Positions 5,434 to 48,200 of a stretch of 64,000 bases of DNA are shown here, piece after piece. The stretch spans positions 310,001 to 374,000 of the forward strand of contig JALMLS010000353.1 of the NCBI GenBank assembly GCA_038496445.1, written 5' to 3'. How positions within the stretch are numbered: position 1 is the stretch's first letter; every line of letters starts with the position of its first letter. This DNA is from Trichosphaerium sp. ATCC 40318. Its lineage: Eukaryota; Protista; Tubulinea. Below the pieces are notes generated by a model, which had not been told where the DNA came from, searched no databases, and saw nothing but the letters and a program-made list of their open reading frames with translations. The position numbers were made by a program, and so were the translations under genes.

Positions 5434-6507
5434 ATGACCTCCTATTATATAAAAGAAGATAATAACGCTCCAAACACAAAAAGACATCCACATGACCCAA
5501 ACGTTTTACCAAACGAAACGAACCTATTCTCTTTACCTTTTGAAGTAATTTGCGTTATACTAAATGTTCTCAATGAAGACCCAGATCGTCTCTCTTCCGC
5601 ACAGAGCTGTAAACTACTTTATAAGGCTATTCATAAAGATGTTGGTTATATAAAAATATTCGTACGAAAACAAGAGGACGCAGAAAAGATTACAGAGCAC
5701 GTGGGTATTTTACGTCATACTGAAATTATAATAGAAAAAAAATGTAATCTACGTCTTTTTAAAGGCGTCAAAGACATCAATGTCAAAAAAATATCAAGTC
5801 ACGTGACAGATGATAGTATTATATCACTTGCCGGCGTAAGATCGATAAATCTAAACAAATGCAAAAGAATCACAAATAGAGGTTTAACGGCGCTAGCTGG
5901 AGTTCATACTATAAAACTACGCGATTGTAAACACGTTGGAGATGACGGTATAAAAGCTCTAGCAGGAGTACATACGATCGACTTGCGATGTACCTACGTG
6001 ACAGACAAGGGTATAATACCATTATCTGGCGTACATCAGATCGATCTATACGGATGCGACAGTATAACAGACAAAGGAGTAAAAGCGCTAAAAGGAGTAC
6101 ATACGATAAATCTAGGGGAATGTAGTCAAGTCACCGATGACGGGATTAAAGCGCTATCAGGCGTTTACAGCATTGATCTTACTTCTAATACTAATGTAAC
6201 GGACTACGGCATTATGGCTCTATCAGGTGTTCATACAATGACGTTGAGCGGTTGCGGAAGAGTTACGGATAGAGGTATAAAAGCATTAAAAGGAGTTCAT
6301 ACTATTTTCTTGTCTGATTCTCAGGTGACCGATGAAGGATTGAAAGCTCTTGCTGGTATTCATACAATATACTTGGATGGGTGTAATCGTATTACCGATG
6401 AAGGAGTAAAAGCATTAAAAGGCGTTCATCAAATCGCTTTGAATGGATGCCGAAATATCACTGAATACGGACTTAAGGCGCTCGTTGGTGCTTATATAAG
6501 TAACTGA
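5434..6507 (+). CDS. Intronless F-box-like + leucine-rich repeat protein
   Basis: F-box-like LFSLPFEVICVILNVL...SCKLLY, followed by about 10 repeats of roughly 22 aa, LxGVHTIxLxxCxxVTDxGxxAL (Cys-containing LRR). Confidence 0.88.
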   Translation: MTSYYIKEDNNAPNTKRHPHDPNVLPNETNLFSLPFEVICVILNVLNEDPDRLSSAQSCKLLYKAIHKDVGYIKIFVRKQEDAEKITEHVGILRHTEIIIEKKCNLRLFKGVKDINVKKISSHVTDDSIISLAGVRSINLNKCKRITNRGLTALAGVHTIKLRDCKHVGDDGIKALAGVHTIDLRCTYVTDKGIIPLSGVHQIDLYGCDSITDKGVKALKGVHTINLGECSQVTDDGIKALSGVYSIDLTSNTNVTDYGIMALSGVHTMTLSGCGRVTDRGIKALKGVHTIFLSDSQVTDEGLKALAGIHTIYLDGCNRITDEGVKALKGVHQIALNGCRNITEYGLKALVGAYISN

Positions 6508-40090: not shown

Positions 40091-40789
40091 CTATGACAAA
40101 ATACAGCTACTTTCATTTTTAGTATTCTTTTTGACTCTAATTTCTTGGGTGCAATAACTCCATTGAAGATACTCTTCTTTTTCTTCTCCATGGAAATATG
40201 AATGTAGCTCAAAGGCTTCACCATTCCTAAACCATAACCCAAAATCTCCATGAAGTTTACCTTCTACATAATGGCATTGTTTAGTTAATTGACCATTATC
40301 AAGCCACTCCTTAAAATCGCCTTCACGCTTGCCCTCCTTATATAAACACGTAGAACGAACTTTACCATTTCGGTGGTAGGAAATAGAATTTCCTTCTAGT
40401 TTGTCGTTAATTAAATGGCAATGAATTTCCTTTCGGCCATTATTATACCAGCACTTGAATTCTCCTTCAATTTTATCATTAACACAGTGATAAAACTCAC
40501 GTAATATTCCGTGGCTATACCAGCTTTTGAACTCACCATGACGTTGGCCATGGTTAAAACATTCTTGACATGCAAGTTTTGAACTCCTCTTACCAAAAAC
40601 GTTATATGTTTTTCTTTGCAGCCACGTGCCTTGTTTCTTTAGCTCATCGTCAAACCTTGTTGTGGTAGCAGTCTGTTTTGAAAGTATTGGCCAAATAACA
40701 TACACTTCAGAGTCTAAATCGATAATATCAAGTTGTAGCTCCAACGGAAGGTGTAGTAGAAGGCACCGATCAGCTAGCGGACTATTCAT
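40091..40789 (-). CDS. Intronless F-box-like + MORN-variant (YwqK-like) repeat protein
   Basis: LLHLPLELQLDII N-terminus, then about five 24-aa repeats xGEFKxWYxNGxxxxxCxYxxGKxE. Confidence 0.85.
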   Translation of the reverse strand: MNSPLADRCLLLHLPLELQLDIIDLDSEVYVIWPILSKQTATTTRFDDELKKQGTWLQRKTYNVFGKRSSKLACQECFNHGQRHGEFKSWYSHGILREFYHCVNDKIEGEFKCWYNNGRKEIHCHLINDKLEGNSISYHRNGKVRSTCLYKEGKREGDFKEWLDNGQLTKQCHYVEGKLHGDFGLWFRNGEAFELHSYFHGEEKEEYLQWSYCTQEIRVKKNTKNESSCILS

Positions 40790-41071
40790 TTATTATATAA
40801 GTAACGAGGATCACTATAACTCTTTAATGATAGGTGGTTAAAAAGTGTACACGTGATAAACGTAAATAATCGAAAAGTTGAGAACAAGGTAAACATAGAA
40901 AAACATTGACCAATTTCTCATACTTACCGGAGTAGATACTTATGGCAGGATATATAACGTCTTCTTCACCTAACATTTAGAGAAAACAATGTATTATTTT
41001 TCTTACAAAAGGTTTATTCTTACATAAAGTGTTGTGACACTTGTCATCAACAAAGTTTTCTTTTTGATTTT

Positions 41072-44000
41072 CTATCTGTATCTTTTGCGTTTTCTTGTTG
41101 GTGAACGCGATTTCCTGGTGTTCCTCGTCTGTTTAGAAGGGATATAAGATGCTGTTCTAGCTCGTTTACCGGAGGTTCTTTGTCTCGATAAAGATCCAGG
41201 TGATTCAGGTGAATAAATTGGACGAGCATACCTTGGACTTGGAGAATAACGTGGTGAGGTTGGAGCATATGAAGGTGATGAAGGTGAATACTCCAGACTT
41301 GGAAGAGAATACCTTGTACTTGGAGAATACGCAGGAGATCTTGAAGAAGGAGAATACTTAGGTGATGAAGGAGAATACCTTGGAGATGGGTGAGAATACC
41401 TGGACGAGTAGAAAGGCGATATTGGAGAGTGTGGAGGCGATTCAGGAGAATACCTTGTACTTGGAGAATACTTAGGTGAGGATGGAGCATACAAAGGTGA
41501 TTCAGGTGAATACTTTGGACTTGGACGAGAATATCTTGGACTTGGAGAATAACGAGGTGAGGGTGGAGCATATGAAGGTGCTTCAGGTGAATACTTTGGT
41601 GATGGAGGAGAATACCTTGTACTTGTGCCTGGAAGAGAATAACAAGAATACAAAGATGATCTCGACTCTGTGGTGTGTTGATAGTTTCCTTGCATACCAT
41701 TCTGTTGTGATGAAGGTTTTTGTTTTTTAGTAGGATTAGATGGTTGTTTTTTTGAAGGTGGCAAAGATTTGTTTTTTTTAGCCAATATTCGTTGAGTTTT
41801 TTTGAATGGATTGTGTGGTTGTTGACTCAAATGATCATTCTTGGTAGATACGTTTTTTGCCATTTGTGTATTGTAGGCTCTTTCTTCTTGTACTTGTTGA
41901 GTGTTTGCAAGTACTTCGGTGTGAGTGCTTTGTTGTTTTGATGTTGGGTTTTTTGGCTTATTGACAGTTGTTTTGGGCGCTTTTGCTATCTCTGAAAGCT
42001 TTGGCTTGGTGATTTTATCTGAAGGGGTCTCTTCTGTGGACAAAAGAGTCTTATTTTTTGTACGCTGTGGTCTACTTGTAATTATTGTTTGATTATTATC
42101 AGACCTGAAACGAACAATCTGTTCAAATTTGGGGCTTTCTACTTTTTGGATTTTTTGCTTTTTCTTTTTTTCTTCCGTTTCTGTATCACGTGATCTTTTT
42201 TTACTTGTCTCAACTTTTTTGGTAGTAGTATTCTTACTATTCTTAGTACTGTTTGGAGGAGTGGAAGATTTTTTTGAAGACAAGAGAGATGAAGCATTGA
42301 ATCGAACACTAAACGAGAAAAAAATTAGAAGAGAAAAAAAAAAAAGAAGAAAAAAAAGGGTACGTTTGCTCCATTACTACGACTTCTTCTTGTTGTTGTT
42401 CTTGTTCTTTTCGTTGTTCTTTATCCTGTTCGTGTTTTTGCACTTCACCTTTAGCACTTTCTTCAACTTCAACCAACTTATCCTCCTCCTTGTCAATAAC
42501 TGTTACAGACGTACCTTGAATCTCTTCATTGTCATGTACACTTAATTCATCGTCAAAAATTTCACCTTCCTCAACATCATCAATACTACGTTCAATGTCT
42601 TTAGCAGCTTCAAATCTTTTAATGTGTTGAGCAGTAAAGAAATGTTTCAATTTTGCTTTCTTAGGATCAGGTTCCATTGAAGAAGATGCATCACATAGTG
42701 TACATAAGAACCACATACGACTACGTTTAGCAAATCCAAAATGAACAAAACCATTTTCATAAGAAAAAACAATATCATCATGGATTTCTTTGTCCAAAAG
42801 CTTTAGATACGTTTTAATACGTAGATCAGTCTCCAATACTTGTGTAGAAGGATAACATTCGCTTTTGTTGATTGTATCAATATGCTTACAACCATTAGAG
42901 CTTTGGCAATGTTGATACCACATACTTTCACGAATAGGAAAGTTACAACAAATCTTATCAATGTAAAAATTGTTTTTGGTACAATTGATACGCTCAACCC
43001 ATCCAAGAGCTATAAGCCGTTCAGTCATAATACTAAGCAACTCTTGTTCCTCATCAGGAAAAGAATCAAGTTGTTCTTGACCATTATCTACGACCACATC
43101 TGATTCCAACGCCAAATCCGTTTTGTTTGCATTTGGTTGTTTATCCAAAGGTGTTGTAGTTGGAGCTAGATTTTCTGGCTCTGGTGCGTTACTAGCACTT
43201 GCTACATCATCTGCAATGCCATTTTTATTTACATTAGTATTGCTAGATTCATCATCACTCAAAGTGAGATCCACGAAAATCTCTAAAAACAAACAAACAA
43301 AAAGTCAGAATTTTTTGAGAACAGTAAAAAAAAATCAGAATTAAAACGGTGTGCCTTTCTTCTTTCTAGTATTATTATCATCATCTATATAAGTAGCTTC
43401 ACGTCTGTCTTTTTTTATGAAAGAGTAACTCGCATCAGGTTGTAGTAAGGCCTCCCTGAACTCATTGGACCGTTCTAAAATTTCTAGAAAATAACGATCC
43501 ATTACTATGTCCTTGAAGTATAGTCGCTTGCTACAAATCGGACAGTTCCATTTATTTGATTTTCGACATATTGAAAGCCAAGTAGAGACATCAAAACACT
43601 AATGAAAGGTGTAACAAACGAATAAACAATGAAAGGAAAGTCACGGTCTTTTTCTGTTTGAAAAATGTTTCTACACAGTAACGTACTCTTATATGGGTAC
43701 AAAATCTTCCACGGCACGGCTTAACCACCTTTGTTAGGCTAATGGGATCTATTAATGGTACTTTTCTCTCCACTTCAATGACACCAAGAGCACTAAACGA
43801 ATCGCTAACTAAACAAATAATTATGCTAAATTCCTGCTTAGTAAATCCTGACGTGCCTTTCTGCTTAGCTTGTGGGATGTCTAGTTGTCTCACTTGGCTA
43901 ATAAGATCTGAAGATGATAAATCTTTTAAGCGCTGAATAATAACAAACCAACCCTTTTGAGTAGATCCATAAGTCACGTGCAGCAAAAAAGAATTAAAAA

Positions 44001-44951
44001 AAAAGACCAACAAACATACCGCTCTTGATGCTTGTCGACACTTAACTGTTATTTTATTGTATCCAGCAACACACTCATCTGATAAGTGCCAGGTATCCTT
44101 TCAGCAGGTAAGTATCAATAAATCTTCGAACAACACCAAAGACTTACTTTATCAGAATGAACTGTTCTGCCATTTATCATTATTTTTGATAAACCTCTTG
44201 GTTTCGAGCTGTATTTAACGTTTTTCTCGTTAACATAGCATCGTAATACTACAGGACCCTTATCTTTTCTATGCATGAATCCACATGTATAATTAGCTTT
44301 CTCATTTACTTTGAAACAACCAAGAGGTTCTCCGTTTTCTGGTTCATAAAAAGGATCATGTTCTTCTCCAAAAGCCATCAAAACTCTGACATATCTCGGA
44401 ATGTCGGCAACGTTTATGTGTTTTGCCTTTATAATCTTGCTCTCAGAACTAGAGGGAAGGTGATATACAGGTCTATACCCAGACGCTTCACTGCAAGCAC
44501 TGTTAATCTACAAAATAAGTCGAAACGTTCTCTCGTACCTAACACTGGCAAAAGCGCGGAATATTGAGCGTAGAAATTGTTCTTGAGTGTAAGTTGGTTT
44601 ATCTTTCGCGCAATAATCTTGCATTGCTGCTAGCATGTAATTCTCAATAGCTGATATGGTGCGAGAGCGATTTAAACGACTATACGACGGTAGTTCAAAC
44701 CTACTGCAGAATTCGTTAGTAATGACGTCCTATGCTCGCTTTTTGGCGTTTTAAATTAGTTTAACGTACTCCAAAACACTACGAAGCTCTTTCAAGCGAA
44801 ATACTTTGAGAAGGAGATACTAACAACATTAGACGCTACTCAAGGGCTCCCAAGACGTCACTAGCGCCATATTAATTACCTCAACTTCCGCATAATTATA
44901 CCGCTCCTTCACATCTTGAAGCCGTCGGGCTTGTCGCCGTTGCTCGGTCAT
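41072..44951 (-). CDS. PIAS/SIZ-type SUMO E3 ligase (SAP-like, SP-RING, SIM) with C-terminal Pol II CTD-like heptads, multi-exon
   Basis: [11 protein letters not shown] (SAP-like); [37 protein letters not shown]...WNCPICSK; [13 protein letters not shown]; an in-frame intron (about 42309-42363) links to the basic, heptad-bearing last exon. Confidence 0.88.
41196..41614 (-). repeat. Coding repeat: about 20 YSPxSPx-type hepta/hexapeptides
   Basis: [61 protein letters not shown] ... [20 protein letters not shown] ... YSPESPG. Confidence 0.95.
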
Positions 44952-45288
44952 CAGCGCATAATATTACTTGTACTATTATCTACAATTATGATAACAAGTT
45001 AAGCCATCAGTTTTCTCCGTTTGCTACGCATGTTTGCTTCAGCTGCATTGACGACATTGAACCTGTGTAAAGAGCTCGGAAAGACATTATCAGTTCTATC
45101 ACGTGAGCTCTTTCAAAAATCGTTTCATGTTGACCTGCGTGATCAATAAGAAACATTATATTTTATCACGAATAGTAGCGTTTTTTCGACAAGTTTTTGG
45201 TGCCAAGTATGTTTGACGGCTGCAGTTCAACGAATATTATTTTTGGAAAAGGGTGTAATTCACAACGGAGTAGAATCAAAAGCATCAT

Positions 45289-48200
45289 ATGGACGTCTAT
45301 GTGACTACAGCTGCAGTGGGCGTTATCACCGTAGGTTGTGTAGTTGTATACTACTTTTCGCGTAGTAAAAATCCGTACAGAGGCTTAGGTGGTACGTGAA
45401 CGCCACTTTAAACTCAAGAAAAGCCTATAACATCACTAGCTGTTAGAAAGAATAAGTTGCTTTCAAAATTCGCTGGCGAGGGCAGTCCTACGCAGCTTAG
45501 GCTGTTATTGAGCGTTCCGAAAGGTATTAACGTGAACAGACGGTATTTCAGAGGTAATTTTAACTTGCGATATGTACAATCAGTTTATAACGCGTGAAAA
45601 GGCCCAGCCCTATGCTCTGCGACTAGATTCGGGCATTTCGAATGTGTCAAAATTCTGGTAGATTTTGGAGCAGGTAAGTTGTTACTCCAACGAGCTTAGC
45701 GACCTCAAAGAGCTGTTTAATGCATTATCTTGATATCTAACGGCTCATTTCGTAGATATTGACATGCCGGACATGAGAGGTGATACACCTCTCATATGTG
45801 CTGCCAGAGGAGGACGTGCAGATATTGCAGCTTATATCATTAAAAAAACAGGCCCACAGAAGGTGCACGAGAAAGGTGAGTTATAATTTTGGTAAACCCA
45901 TTTAAAAGTGACTTCTCGGTAGGCTGGAAAGGGTACTGATTTACCATAAGGACTAGTAATAGTGTGTTAATTTTAAAAAGGTTAACGGCTCTTCATTGGG
46001 GTGCTCTAAATGGTAGAGATGAAGTGTGCACGTGTAAGTTGCTACAACAATATTTTTGTATTTTGTTAACGTTTGGTGCTTTAGTACTGTTGAAGCATGG
46101 CGCTCATGTTAATAGCCTGACCAATGCTCTGGAGACACCATTACATTTTGCATCAGGTAGTGGTCACGTTCACGTCATAGAAATATTATTAAAACAACCT
46201 GGTGTCCTACTTAATGAACAAGATAAAAATGGTATTTTTTAGGTTTTGGTTCTCTTCTCTGCTTACGCTGTACAAGGTTTAACGCCTCTCCATTGGTCAG
46301 CTCGGCGATATGGAAATCTTGGTCTTTCACTTATTGATGCTGGAGCTGATGTTTCTATACAATCAAATGAAGGTCTAACAGCTTTTCAAGTTGCTTGTAC
46401 GCTTAATGTTATTTTTGGATGTATTCTTACCTTTGTTAGGCTTGCGTGGAAACACAGAACATGTCACCGCAGTAAAAGATAAAGAAAAGGCAGACTACAT
46501 AAAAACTATAGTCTCTATGATACCAGCACGTGATATTCCAAGTATTTATTGCTAATGAGATGCTTTGTTTTAGGGAAACGAAACGCATGAAATAGAACAT
46601 TTGAGAAGAGTCTTAGAGCATCTTTGCACAAATGACAATGAAGACTGCAACAAAACTTTGAAACTCCTCGCGTCAAATATAGCTACTCTTGGTTGCACAC
46701 TCTTAAAAACGGTACGTGCCAGTTATCACTCTAGTTACCACGTGGTGCTAAGTTTGTATTTTATAGAAAGAAGGAGATGAGTCAAGTGCATTTAAACGAT
46801 TAGTTCATACTTTCGTAAATGTAATACTTACTGTTAGAAGCAAAACAGGTGTTGATATTTTTTACTAGTTTTAGGTTTCTAATATCTTATGTAGAAACTG
46901 CACCTTGTATTGAAAAGTCTATGACTATTATTTCAGACCTATGGGATGCGTTGGAGACTAAACTTGAGACAACCGAAAAAGCATTATCTGAAGAACCGAG
47001 TATGTAACAGAGTCTTTATGTTGGTCTTGTAACTTTCTTTTCAGATGATGAAGCAAAATCTGTGATGCTAGATACCGCGTTCATACATGCGAGGTATATT
47101 ATAGAGGCTTATTCAAGTATAACGAAGGTATCAAGTGGAGAAGATAAACGAAGGTATTCTTATTTTTTTTACCACGTGTTTTATACTCACATTGGTTAGG
47201 TTCTTGAACTTTGTTAAAGATAGAGCATCTTTATTTCAAGCATTAATAAGTGACGATGTTCTATTATTAACAGGTCCTTTTGAGTTCGTTCTACAAGTAA
47301 GTGGAACTGTTAGTTTATTTTGATTGTTTCTGGTTTTTACTAATTGTTATTTTTTCTTGTTAAGACATTAGATGGTGGAGTCCTACCAGACTCGATTGTA
47401 AAGCTTTTAGATTTATTAACATTTGACCAAAAGCGATCTTGGCTGTTACGCAAAGTACACGAAGATGCATCTGAGGTAACACTTACTAAGACAGTAATGT
47501 TTAGTAATTTACTAAAAAAAATTTAAGGGCAAGTACGAAGGAGTTAATATTCTTGTAAATCGATCTGGCGGCATTCTACAAAACAGTTGTGGTTCAATAA
47601 TGTCAAATGATGCTCGAAACTTAAAGGGTAAACTATGGGTTAAGTTTGAAGGAGAAGAAGGAGTAGGTATGGAAAACCGGAGTTACAATATGAACAAACT
47701 GATTTCTTTACAGGCAGAGGAGTGCTTCGTGAATGGTTCTCTTTACTTAGTCAAGAGATGTTCGATCCAAACAATGCTTTATTCAAGCTCTGTCAAGATG
47801 GTGTAACGTTTCAGTTTAACCCTCAGTCTCACGTGAATGCAGACCACCTTTCATACTTTCGGTACAAGGAAACTGTTTACAATTCTGTATGTCTGACCTT
47901 GTTTTTAGGTTTATAGGCCGAGTCATTGGCATGGCTATCTACCACGGAGAGTATTTATCAGTTCACTTTACACGAAGCGTTTATAAGCATATGCTTGGAA
48001 GAAGAGTCCTGTTGGAAGACTTAGAAGTAGTTGACACAACTTATTATACAAATCTATCGTACGTTATTACTGGTTTAGTTTGTTGTGGTTTGTTTTTTGT
48101 TCTTGCTATTTATCACGTGACATTTTGTTGTTCAATATTCTTATGATTCTTTTAGAGGGATGAGAAAATATAATATTGATGATGCTGATTTGGGTCTGAC

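What the first reader, a model, noticed from the sequence alone, without database searches (positions are those of the whole stretch)
41072..44951. PIAS/SIZ SUMO E3 ligase fused to an RNA polymerase II CTD-like heptad tail
Seen: SAP-like, SP-RING and SIM motifs splice in frame (..EQT|[13 protein letters not shown]..) to an exon with about 20 YSPxSPx repeats. These keep Y1, S2-P3 and S5-P6 and vary positions 4 and 7, with a higher-order unit of about 27 aa (YSPS[TP]R[20 protein letters not shown][RK]). Known: YSPTSPS is the RPB1 CTD, a CDK7/9/12 substrate that recruits capping, splicing and 3'-end factors; I know of no characterised PIAS/Siz protein with it. Inference: a CTD mimic could couple SUMOylation to transcription-cycle phosphorylation, for example by recruiting CTD readers as substrates or entering Pol II condensates.
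Basis: partly seen in the sequence, partly recalled or inferred. Interest (0 to 1): 0.82.

Follow-up and report, generated by a model that had tools for sequence, protein, structure and literature searches.

The report
SUMO ligase with optional CTD-like tail
A gene for a PIAS-type SUMO-attaching enzyme in an unidentified eukaryote, probably a protist, really does end in about 20 tyrosine-serine-proline units resembling the RNA polymerase II tail, but the resemblance is loose, an alternative splice can leave the tail untranslated, and what it does is untested.

Summary
RNA contigs from three public runs define a 10-exon minus-strand gene (44951-41072). It reads in frame as 1108 aa. The joined exons give a full zf-MIZ/SP-RING (60.7 bits, cut-off 33.5), a PIAS2-like stretch after it, and a PIAS-type SIM.

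The predicted 55-nt intron before the repeat exon is removed in two transcript contigs, shown by length arithmetic. The last exon encodes a Lys-rich linker, a 149-aa array and an Arg/Lys-rich end. The array has 21 Tyr-started units (12 heptads, 4 hexamers, an 81-nt higher-order repeat).

Caveats:
- SAP and PINIT were not detected by the tools.
- Only 6 units are strict YSPxSPx, and the array scores below Pfam's cut-off for the CTD repeat (15.2 against 20.3 bits). Its best database matches are still RPB1 CTDs.
- One transcript contig splices an extra 44-nt intron. This stops the protein at residue 767 and leaves the array in the 3'UTR.
- The middle of the protein has no homologue among 1.84 billion representatives, so conservation of the tail cannot be tested.

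CTD-like heptads on non-polymerase proteins already exist in databases. The scan's unchecked notes report more in this genome. Verdict: a real PIAS-family variant with an optional, cationic, CTD-like tail. CTD mimicry is unproven.

The parts
41072..44951 (-). Whole CDS of the long isoform. Ten exons: 44951-44880, 44819-44770, 44703-44539, 44490-44147, 44096-44019, 43952-43857, 43808-43687, 43598-43355, 43282-42364, 42308-41072. 1108 aa.
   Evidence: Joints in RNA contigs of X1, X3 and X4. In-frame translation with no internal stop.
44631..44819 (-). N-terminal 'SAP-like' stretch (aa 25-65), not confirmed
   Evidence: No Pfam family at E<=1 on the joined 55-aa peptide. No PDB match. The resemblance is by eye only.
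43857..44490 (-). Region where a PINIT domain is expected (aa about 97-269), not detected by tools
   Evidence: No Pfam or PDB hit for exons searched singly. By eye and from memory of PIAS1, short motifs (ING, NKIT, and a hydrophobic strand followed by RLKDLSS) sit in the expected order.
43527..43746 (-). SP-RING / zf-MIZ zinc finger (aa 290-333), split by intron 43599-43686. Ligands C-x-H ... C-P-x-C are present.
   Evidence: PF02891 60.7 bits, E 1.1e-16 on the RNA-supported join. The halves singly score 16.3 and 30 bits.
43356..43598 (-). Second half of the SP-RING plus the stretch after it, aligned to PIAS2 and PIAS3
   Evidence: phmmer against PDB: 4fo9_A PIAS2 E 3e-8 (residues 239-307), 4mvt_A PIAS3 E 7.8e-7. 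Siz1 and Siz2 match weakly.
43242..43355 (-). SUMO-interacting motif with acidic/Ser flank (aa 391-404), spanning GC-AG intron 43283-43354
   Evidence: Read directly from the spliced CDS. The V-D-L-T core followed by S/D/E is the pattern of PIAS SIMs (own knowledge).
42364..43282 (-). Orphan middle region (aa 392-697): acidic stretch, two Cys/His clusters (aa 489-524 and 582-610), E/Q-rich acidic stretch
   Evidence: No homologue among 1.84e9 representative proteins. No Pfam hit. AF2 single-sequence model has pLDDT 38.6.
42309..42363 (-). 55-nt GT-AG intron joining the ligase part to the tail exon
   Evidence: X1 record 3 and X3 record 10 hold 58 letters between 42308 and 42422, which equals 42364-42421. 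Donor GTACCCT, acceptor TTTAG.
42072..42115 (-). Optional 44-nt GT-AG intron inside the last exon. When spliced, the frame shifts and a stop follows at residue 767. When retained, the ORF runs on into the array.
   Evidence: Spliced in X3 record 10 (depth 20.3, 193 letters on the shorter side, no shared letters at the joint). Retained in X1 record 3, which has the 55-nt intron removed. The donor GTTCGT lacks the A at +3 that all seven other GT donors have.
41642..42307 (-). Lys-rich basic linker (aa 698-919, net charge +30)
   Evidence: Charge count. Only 2 of 20000 shuffles of most of this stretch (window 41660-42115) are stop-free. The second allele in X1 differs by two 3-nt indels.
41195..41641 (-). 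Tyr-phased Ser-Pro array (aa 920-1068): 21 units, 12 heptads, 28 SP sites, net charge +11, 81-nt higher-order repeat
   Evidence: Best hits are RPB1 CTDs, E down to 1.4e-21. PF05001 scores 15.2 bits, below the 20.3 cut-off.
41075..41194 (-). Arg/Lys-rich C-terminal end (aa 1069-1108; 16 basic, 0 acidic residues), NLS-like
   Evidence: Composition. The NLS role is inferred.

Best explanation
This is an expressed gene for a PIAS/Siz-family SUMO E3 ligase with a complete SP-RING, a PIAS-like stretch after it and a SIM.

Its last exon adds a lineage-specific, disordered, strongly basic tail. The tail has three parts: a Lys-rich linker, a 149-aa array of Tyr-phased S-P units, and an Arg/Lys-rich end. 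The array grew by duplication of an 81-nt (27-aa) unit.

An optional 44-nt intron in that exon decides which protein is made. Retained, it gives the 1108-aa form with the tail. Spliced, it gives a 767-aa form without it.

Shown here: the gene structure, both transcript forms, the domains, and the sequence likeness of the array to RPB1 CTDs.

Inferred:
- The tail is a multivalent targeting module controlled by phosphorylation. Unphosphorylated it is cationic, suited to nuclear import and to contact with nucleic acid or chromatin.
- Its 28 Ser-Pro sites could be charged by proline-directed kinases.
- This would move the ligase between nuclear compartments, possibly including Pol II/CTD-type assemblies.
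- Recognition by genuine CTD kinases or CTD readers is possible but is the least supported step.
For: - Nine introns are spliced in RNA contigs and the CDS is in frame.
- zf-MIZ scores 60.7 bits. PIAS2 and PIAS3 alignments give E 3e-8 and 8e-7.
- The tail exon is joined to the ligase exons in two independent contigs.
- The long ORF is unlikely to be chance. The linker is stop-free in only 2 of 20000 shuffles. The other two frames have 4 and 27 stops. The second X1 allele has two 3-nt indels. Four of 8 array variants are synonymous.
- Ser at position 5 is coded by both TCN and AGY codons.
- The array scores 105 bits against RPB1 CTDs, against -45 for shuffles. RPB1 CTDs are its best hits.
- Y1 is kept in 12/12 heptads, P3 in 9/12, S5 in 11/12 and P6 in 11/12, while positions 4 and 7 vary. 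This matches the essential and dispensable letters in S. pombe (PMC4574753).
- Charge map: linker +30, array +11, end +16.
Against: - The X3 contig shows the 44-nt intron spliced, so in that sample the dominant assembled form does not translate the tail.
- X3 and X4 give no coverage of the array at all.
- One low-depth X2 contig has a 1-nt insertion in an A-run at 41852, which would break the frame if real.
- There are no orthologues, so there is no conservation test.
- PF05001 is below its cut-off.
- SAP and PINIT are undetected.
- Contigs cannot give isoform ratios.
- Nothing here shows phosphorylation, localisation or ligase activity.
Confidence: 0.6

Rival explanations
1. True CTD mimic. 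The array is phosphorylated by CDK7/9/12-type CTD kinases and bound by CTD readers, or partitions into Pol II condensates. SUMO ligase activity is thereby coupled to the transcription cycle.
For: - The best database matches are RPB1 CTDs.
- There are seven di-heptad stretches of the form Y[SA]PxSPxY[SA]P.
- The letters that are kept are the essential CTD letters (PMC4574753).
- Short CTD-mimicking motifs that bind a CID are known in Trf4 and Sen1 (PMC4186968, PMC7110113).
- Unchecked notes of this scan report CTD-like heptads on other non-polymerase proteins of this genome.
Against: - The array is below Pfam's CTD-repeat cut-off.
- Hexamers break the heptad register after every 2-3 heptads.
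- T4 is present in 1 of 12 heptads and S7 in 2 of 12, while K/R occupies position 7 in 7 of 12.
- K7 repeats are rare in RPB1 outside animals and Plasmodium (PMC4362643).
- This organism's own RPB1 CTD could not be retrieved for comparison.
- The tail is optional.
Confidence: 0.2
2. The array is mostly untranslated. The 767-aa short form is the working protein, and the open frame over the array is a by-product of a 21/81-nt minisatellite in a long 3'UTR.
For: - The 44-nt intron is spliced in the only X3 contig over that place.
- The array is also open in a second frame of the same strand (ORF 41047-41700), as repeats often are.
- X2 has a 1-nt insertion.
Against: - X1 holds a contig with the 55-nt intron removed and the 44 nt retained.
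- The non-repetitive linker between the optional intron and the array is also open (2 of 20000 shuffles).
- Both indels of the second allele are 3 nt long.
- Array variants lean towards synonymous changes.
- Ser is coded by both TCN and AGY.
- The optional donor is weaker than the constitutive ones.
Confidence: 0.13
3. The tail is made on its own from an internal transcription start. This would be a free basic protein carrying the array, starting at Met 694 just before the 55-nt intron. Such a transcript would overlap the ligase gene's 3' part.
For: - An X4 cDNA contig ends at 42602 with the template-switch oligo, which marks an RNA 5' end inside exon 9.
- X1 depth rises 5 to 9-fold from the 5' exons to the array.
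Against: - There is a single low-depth contig (2.6). Broken mRNA gives the same signal.
- The depth gradient fits 3' bias of oligo-dT libraries.
- Contigs join exon 9 to exon 10 continuously.
Confidence: 0.05

Closest known systems
PIAS1-4 (animals), Siz1/Siz2 (yeast), SIZ1 (plants): SP-RING SUMO E3 ligases
   Same: Both have an SP-RING with all four zinc ligands. The stretch after it aligns to PIAS2 and PIAS3. A V-D-L-T type SIM with an acidic/Ser flank follows directly. The ring sits about 290 aa from the N terminus. Both have a variable, disordered, Ser-rich C terminus.
   Different: SAP and PINIT are not detectable by profile or PDB search. There is a 300-aa orphan middle region with Cys/His clusters. 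The C terminus is a Tyr-phased S-P array rather than a plain Ser/Thr-rich tail. An optional intron removes the tail from the reading frame.
RPB1 C-terminal domain (YSPTSPS heptads, Pfam PF05001)
   Same: Tyr comes every 7 residues in blocks. S2-P3 and S5-P6 are kept. RPB1 CTDs are the best matches in a 5.8-billion-protein search. K7-type heptads exist in the distal mammalian CTD and in primate Plasmodium CTDs (PMC4362643).
   Different: It is not on a polymerase. It has 12 heptads interrupted by hexamers. T4 and S7 are almost absent, K/R sits at position 7, and every 27-aa unit holds a YAP heptad. It scores below the Pfam cut-off. Its net charge is +11, whereas the CTD is near neutral.
CTD-mimicking motifs: Nrd1-interacting motifs of Trf4 and Sen1 (PMC4186968, PMC7110113); PIE-1 of C. 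elegans (heptad-like motif from own knowledge; role cited in bioRxiv 10.1101/2021.07.12.452040)
   Same: These are non-polymerase nuclear proteins carrying CTD-like sequence that engages CTD-binding or CTD-modifying factors.
   Different: Those are single short motifs with shown binding partners. Here there is a long array with no partner known.
Non-RPB1 proteins with CTD-like heptads found here (P0073 RING-H2, P0016/18/19 Mytilus MATH proteins, P0054 RPB3-like, P0058 helicase-like, P0089)
   Same: A heptad array is appended to an unrelated domain. P0073 is a RING-type E3-like protein with an acidic stretch followed by seven near-canonical heptads.
   Different: Those arrays are closer to the YSPTSPS consensus. 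None holds a zf-MIZ domain. None is characterised, as far as the literature searched shows.
SPKK/SPXX minor-groove DNA-binding motifs of sperm histones H1 and H2B (own knowledge)
   Same: Repeated S-P followed by a basic residue, on a basic nuclear tail, regulated by proline-directed phosphorylation.
   Different: Here each unit starts with Tyr and has only one basic residue. DNA binding was not tested.

Membership tests
PIAS/Siz SUMO E3 ligases | SP-RING (zf-MIZ, PF02891) above the gathering score, with C-x-H...C-x-x-C ligands | tested here: met
   60.7 bits against a cut-off of 33.5, E 1.1e-16, on the RNA-supported exon join. The ligands can be read in the sequence.
PIAS/Siz SUMO E3 ligases | Conserved stretch following the ring (SP-CTD) | tested here: met
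   The alignment to PIAS2 4fo9_A 239-307 (E 3e-8) and PIAS3 4mvt_A 256-322 runs about 45 residues past the last zinc ligand.
PIAS/Siz SUMO E3 ligases | SIM after the ring (hydrophobic core plus acidic/Ser flank) | tested here: met
   aa 391-404, read from the spliced CDS. This is a pattern match only; no binding was tested.
PIAS/Siz SUMO E3 ligases | PINIT domain (PF14324) before the ring | tested here: inconclusive
   The exons could only be searched singly. No Pfam or PDB hit was found. Motifs in the expected order were seen by eye only.
PIAS/Siz SUMO E3 ligases | N-terminal SAP domain (PF02037) | tested here: not met
   No Pfam family at E<=1 on the joined 55-aa N-terminal peptide. No PDB hit. 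Some family members, such as the plant PIAL proteins (own knowledge), also lack it.
PIAS/Siz SUMO E3 ligases | Ubc9-dependent SUMO ligase activity | not testable with these tools
   Needs an in vitro SUMOylation assay.
RNA polymerase II CTD (PF05001 repeat) | Pfam RNA_pol_Rpb1_R at or above the gathering score | tested here: not met
   15.2 bits against a cut-off of 20.3, E 0.027, 5 stretches. No hit when the 403-aa tail ORF (41072-42283) was scanned.
RNA polymerase II CTD (PF05001 repeat) | Uninterrupted tandem heptads in one register | tested here: not met
   12 of 21 units are 7 aa. Hexamers and irregular units break the register after every 2-3 heptads.
RNA polymerase II CTD (PF05001 repeat) | Essential letters Y1, P3, S5 and P6 kept (PMC4574753) | tested here: met
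   Within the 12 heptads, Y1 is kept in 12/12, P3 in 9/12, S5 in 11/12 and P6 in 11/12. T4 is kept in 1/12 and S7 in 2/12.
RNA polymerase II CTD (PF05001 repeat) | Attached to the RPB1 catalytic core | tested here: not met
   The array is the last exon of a zf-MIZ gene.
Functional CTD mimic | Phosphorylated by CTD kinases and/or bound by CTD-interaction domains | not testable with these tools
   Needs kinase assays and pull-downs.

The most novel reading that the evidence does not exclude
The long isoform is a SUMO E3 ligase whose alternatively spliced tail is a working, cationic variant of the Pol II CTD. CTD kinases would write on it and CTD readers or Pol II condensates would take it up, so that SUMOylation is delivered to the transcription machinery. 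It would be one of a set of CTD-tailed nuclear proteins in this organism, that is, a 'CTD code' used beyond the polymerase.
Probability: 0.15. Interest if true: 0.8.

Novelty: new variant of a known kind. Interest (0 to 1): 0.5.

Why it matters
If the tail is read by CTD kinases or readers, this would be a natural case of the CTD code lent to an enzyme that modifies proteins, with splicing as the on/off switch. It would give a handle on how SUMOylation is targeted to transcription sites.

If the tail is not read that way, the gene still has value. It is a well-supported example of how a Tyr/Ser-Pro minisatellite can build a phosphorylatable basic tail on a conserved enzyme. It also warns that likeness to the CTD is common outside RPB1: several unrelated proteins in public databases carry such heptads.

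Tried and rejected
- **Orthologue search.** I ran no further search on the linker, because a region without any relative there was unlikely to give one.
- **Tail exon against the 5.8e9 set**. It returned only CTD-bearing proteins of 226-719 aa, and none had zf-MIZ. Longer fusions are outside that tool's length range.
- **ESM Atlas with the tail**. It gave only weak SRRM2-like basic low-complexity neighbours (score at most 0.67), which is not evidence.
- **AlphaFold2 of exon 9 without an alignment**. pLDDT was 38.6, which is unusable, so no fold search was run.
- **PDB and Pfam searches of single small exons for SAP and PINIT**. Nothing was found. The exons are too short singly, and I did not type long joined sequences.
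- **Naming the organism.** I used the neighbouring MORN gene. It gave only 40%-identical unnamed or MMETSP proteins, so the organism stays unknown.
- **Looking for this genome's RPB1 in the scan's notes**. None was found.
- **Findings look-up by sequence**. It was blank.
- **Reading rejected:** that the 44-nt joint is a reverse-transcriptase artefact. The joint has GT..AG on the gene's strand and no shared letters at the joint.
Full report
**What is in the sequence**

The region 41072-44951 holds a multi-exon gene on the minus strand. These are a split zinc-finger region, a V-D-L-T motif followed by acidic residues, and a long terminal ORF. That ORF ends in a run of Tyr-Ser-Pro units. Tandem Repeats Finder reports an 81-nt period over 41446-41625 (2.2 copies, 84% matches) and 21-nt periods beside it.

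**Transcript evidence**

One look-up found public runs that hold this DNA. Contigs of four of them were laid on 40900-45300. X1, X3 and X4 are cDNA: introns are missing from their contigs, and X3 and X4 carry template-switch oligo sequence at contig ends.

Nine introns are supported:
- 44820-44879
- 44704-44769
- 44491-44538
- about 44097-44146
- about 43953-44018
- 43809-43856
- 43599-43686
- 43283-43354
- 42309-42363

Two of them are GC-AG introns with the same AAG|GCAC donor. With these introns removed, the CDS from ATG 44951 to TAG 41072-41074 is 3327 nt. It reads as 1108 aa without a stop.

It lies in a stretch the reads tool masked as repetitive. In X1 record 3 and X3 record 10, exactly 58 contig letters lie between window positions 42308 and 42422. 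That is the length of 42364-42421, so the 55 nt are absent from both contigs. The repeat exon is therefore joined to the ligase exons in transcripts.

X3 record 10 also skips 42072-42115. This is 44 nt, GT..AG on the gene's strand, with 193 letters on the shorter side and no shared letters at the joint. Removing 44 nt shifts the frame, and a stop follows seven codons later. The product is a 767-aa protein, and the whole array lies in the 3'UTR.

X1 record 3 has the 55-nt intron removed but keeps these 44 nt, which gives the long ORF. Both forms therefore exist. Contigs cannot give their ratio.

The optional donor, GTTCGT, lacks the A at +3 that all seven other GT donors of the gene have. At 44 nt it is also the shortest intron. 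This fits a weak, alternative site.

X3 and X4 have no coverage below 41789. An A-run lies there, so internal oligo-dT priming is the likely cause (inference).

**Is the long ORF real coding sequence?**

Evidence for:
- The non-repetitive linker between the optional intron and the array is stop-free in only 2 of 20000 composition-preserving shuffles. The other two frames of the exon hold 4 and 27 stops.
- A second allele in X1 differs in the linker by a 3-nt insertion and a 3-nt deletion.
- Four of the 8 variants in the array are synonymous.
- Ser at heptad position 5 is coded by TCA, TCT, TCG and AGT in different units. This is hard to get by simple repeat copying without selection on the protein.

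Evidence against:
- One 151-nt X2 contig at depth 2 has an extra base in an A-run at 41852. If real, it would break the frame.

I take the long form as a genuine coding isoform, with moderate confidence.

**The ligase part**

The two halves of the zinc finger, searched singly, gave 16.3 and 30 bits for zf-MIZ. Joined as the RNA joins them (a 66-aa peptide typed from the translation), they give PF02891 at 60.7 bits against a cut-off of 33.5, E 1.1e-16.

The exon after the intron aligns to human PIAS2 (4fo9, E 3e-8) and PIAS3 (4mvt, E 7.8e-7). The alignment runs across the second zinc-ligand pair and about 45 residues beyond. Siz1 and Siz2 match weakly. The SIM follows at aa 391-404.

SAP was not found: there was no Pfam family at E<=1 on the joined N-terminal peptide and nothing in the PDB. 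PINIT was not found either, but its exons could only be searched one at a time. By eye, and from my memory of PIAS1, short motifs stand in the expected order. That is a lead, not a test.

The 305 aa of exon 9 include two Cys/His clusters. They have no relative among 1.84 billion representative proteins, no Pfam hit and no usable model.

**The tail**

The last exon encodes three parts:
- a 222-aa Lys-rich linker (net charge +30)
- a 149-aa array (aa 920-1068, net charge +11, 28 Ser-Pro sites)
- a 40-aa end with 16 basic and no acidic residues

The array has 21 Tyr-started units: 12 of 7 aa, 4 of 6 aa and 5 irregular. Six units are strict YSPxSPx, nine fit Y[SA]PxSPx, and seven di-heptad stretches fit Y[SA]PxSPxY[SA]P.

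Within the heptads:

| Position | Residue kept or found | Count |
|---|---|---|
| 1 | Tyr | 12/12 |
| 2 | Ser (Ala in the other 3) | 9/12 |
| 3 | Pro | 9/12 |
| 4 | Thr | 1/12 |
| 5 | Ser | 11/12 |
| 6 | Pro | 11/12 |
| 7 | Lys or Arg | 7/12 |
| 7 | Ser | 2/12 |

The letters that are kept are the ones that alanine scanning found essential in the fission-yeast CTD (Tyr1, Pro3, Ser5, Pro6). The free ones are those found dispensable (PMC4574753).

A search of the 5.8-billion-protein set with the exon returned almost only RPB1 C-terminal fragments, with E down to 1.4e-21. The array scores 105 bits against ten of them, while 100 shuffles of it score -45 +/- 8. The likeness to the CTD is therefore real and lies in the order of residues, not only in composition.

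The likeness is also loose. Pfam's CTD-repeat model gives 15.2 bits, under its 20.3 cut-off. Hexamers break the register. The array is cationic. Lys at position 7 is rare in RPB1 outside animals and some Plasmodium species (PMC4362643).

**How unusual is it?**

The same search showed that heptad arrays on non-polymerase proteins are not rare in databases:
- Mytilus MATH-domain proteins
- an RPB3-like protein
- a helicase-like protein
- a zinc-finger protein
- P0073, a RING-H2 E3-like protein with seven near-canonical heptads after an acidic stretch

None of them carries zf-MIZ.

The scan's own notes list three further CTD-like arrays on non-polymerase proteins in this genome (s1-372744, s1-372808, s1-372479). 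Those notes are unchecked, I could not reach that DNA, and I give them no weight as evidence.

Four literature searches found no paper on a PIAS/Siz protein with such a tail. They did find the known CTD-mimicking motifs of Trf4 and Sen1 (PMC4186968, PMC7110113). PIE-1, Pgc and Pem-1 are cited as inhibitors of CTD Ser2 phosphorylation in bioRxiv 10.1101/2021.07.12.452040. That PIE-1 carries a heptad-like motif is from my own knowledge, and the library holds no paper with it.

**Most likely mechanism**

Shown: a PIAS-family ligase gene with two transcript forms, one of which encodes a basic Tyr/Ser-Pro tail.

Inferred: the tail is a disordered targeting module. Its basic linker and end would serve nuclear import and contact with nucleic acid or chromatin. 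The 28 proline-directed sites allow a charge switch by phosphorylation. The Tyr-phased multivalent array could let the ligase join assemblies that also take up the Pol II CTD. Splicing of the 44-nt intron would produce a ligase without this address.

I put 0.6 on this general picture. I put 0.2 on the stronger claim that genuine CTD kinases and readers use the tail, 0.13 on the tail being essentially untranslated, and 0.05 on a separate tail-only transcript.

**Verdict**

This is a new variant of a known kind: a PIAS-family E3 with an optional, cationic, CTD-like array. It is of moderate interest until isoform ratios, translation and orthologues are known.

Noticed in passing
window 42602 (minus strand), inside exon 9: An X4 cDNA contig ends here with the template-switch oligo, which marks an RNA 5' end. 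The next in-frame Met (aa 694) lies just before the 55-nt intron and would give a tail-only protein. It could equally be a broken mRNA. Depth is only 2.6.
   Followed up: partly
window 43809-43856 and 43283-43354: Two GC-AG introns in one gene, both with the donor context AAG|GCAC. This may be a habit of this genome's spliceosome.
   Followed up: no
window 45247-45262 (+ strand): X3 and X4 contigs begin here with the template-switch oligo. A divergent neighbour gene starts about 250-300 nt from this gene's 5' end, so the promoter region is probably shared and bidirectional.
   Followed up: no
window 40091-40789 (-): Single-exon MORN-repeat gene just downstream (PF07661, E 6e-12). Its nearest relatives are only 40% identical (one MMETSP transcript, one JGI protein), so the organism has no close annotated relative.
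   Followed up: partly
window 41929-42041 and 41360-41630: X1 holds a second haplotype: SNP bubbles plus two 3-nt indels, at about 40% of the depth. The sample is heterozygous or mixed.
   Followed up: partly
L001:3001-3909 (ENA ERZ26869290 ctg304856): P0073 is a RING-H2 protein with seven near-canonical YSPTSPS heptads. It sits on a 12.5-kb metagenome contig of tightly packed, apparently intronless genes next to a DCP2/Nudix gene. The layout recalls a giant virus (speculation).
   Followed up: partly
proteins P0054, P0016, P0018, P0019, P0058: Other non-RPB1 carriers of CTD-like heptads: an RPB3-like subunit with YAPTSPA repeats, Mytilus MATH-domain proteins with more than 12 canonical heptads, and a helicase-like protein with an internal array.
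   Followed up: no
window 42624-42989 (-), aa 489-524 and 582-610: Two Cys/His clusters in the orphan middle region. The second has C-x2-C ... H-x5-H spacing, as in matrin/U1-type zinc fingers (by eye). No family hit and no homologue anywhere.
   Followed up: partly
window 5434-6507 (+): Single-exon F-box-like plus LRR_6 protein (LRR_6 E 1e-23).
   Followed up: no
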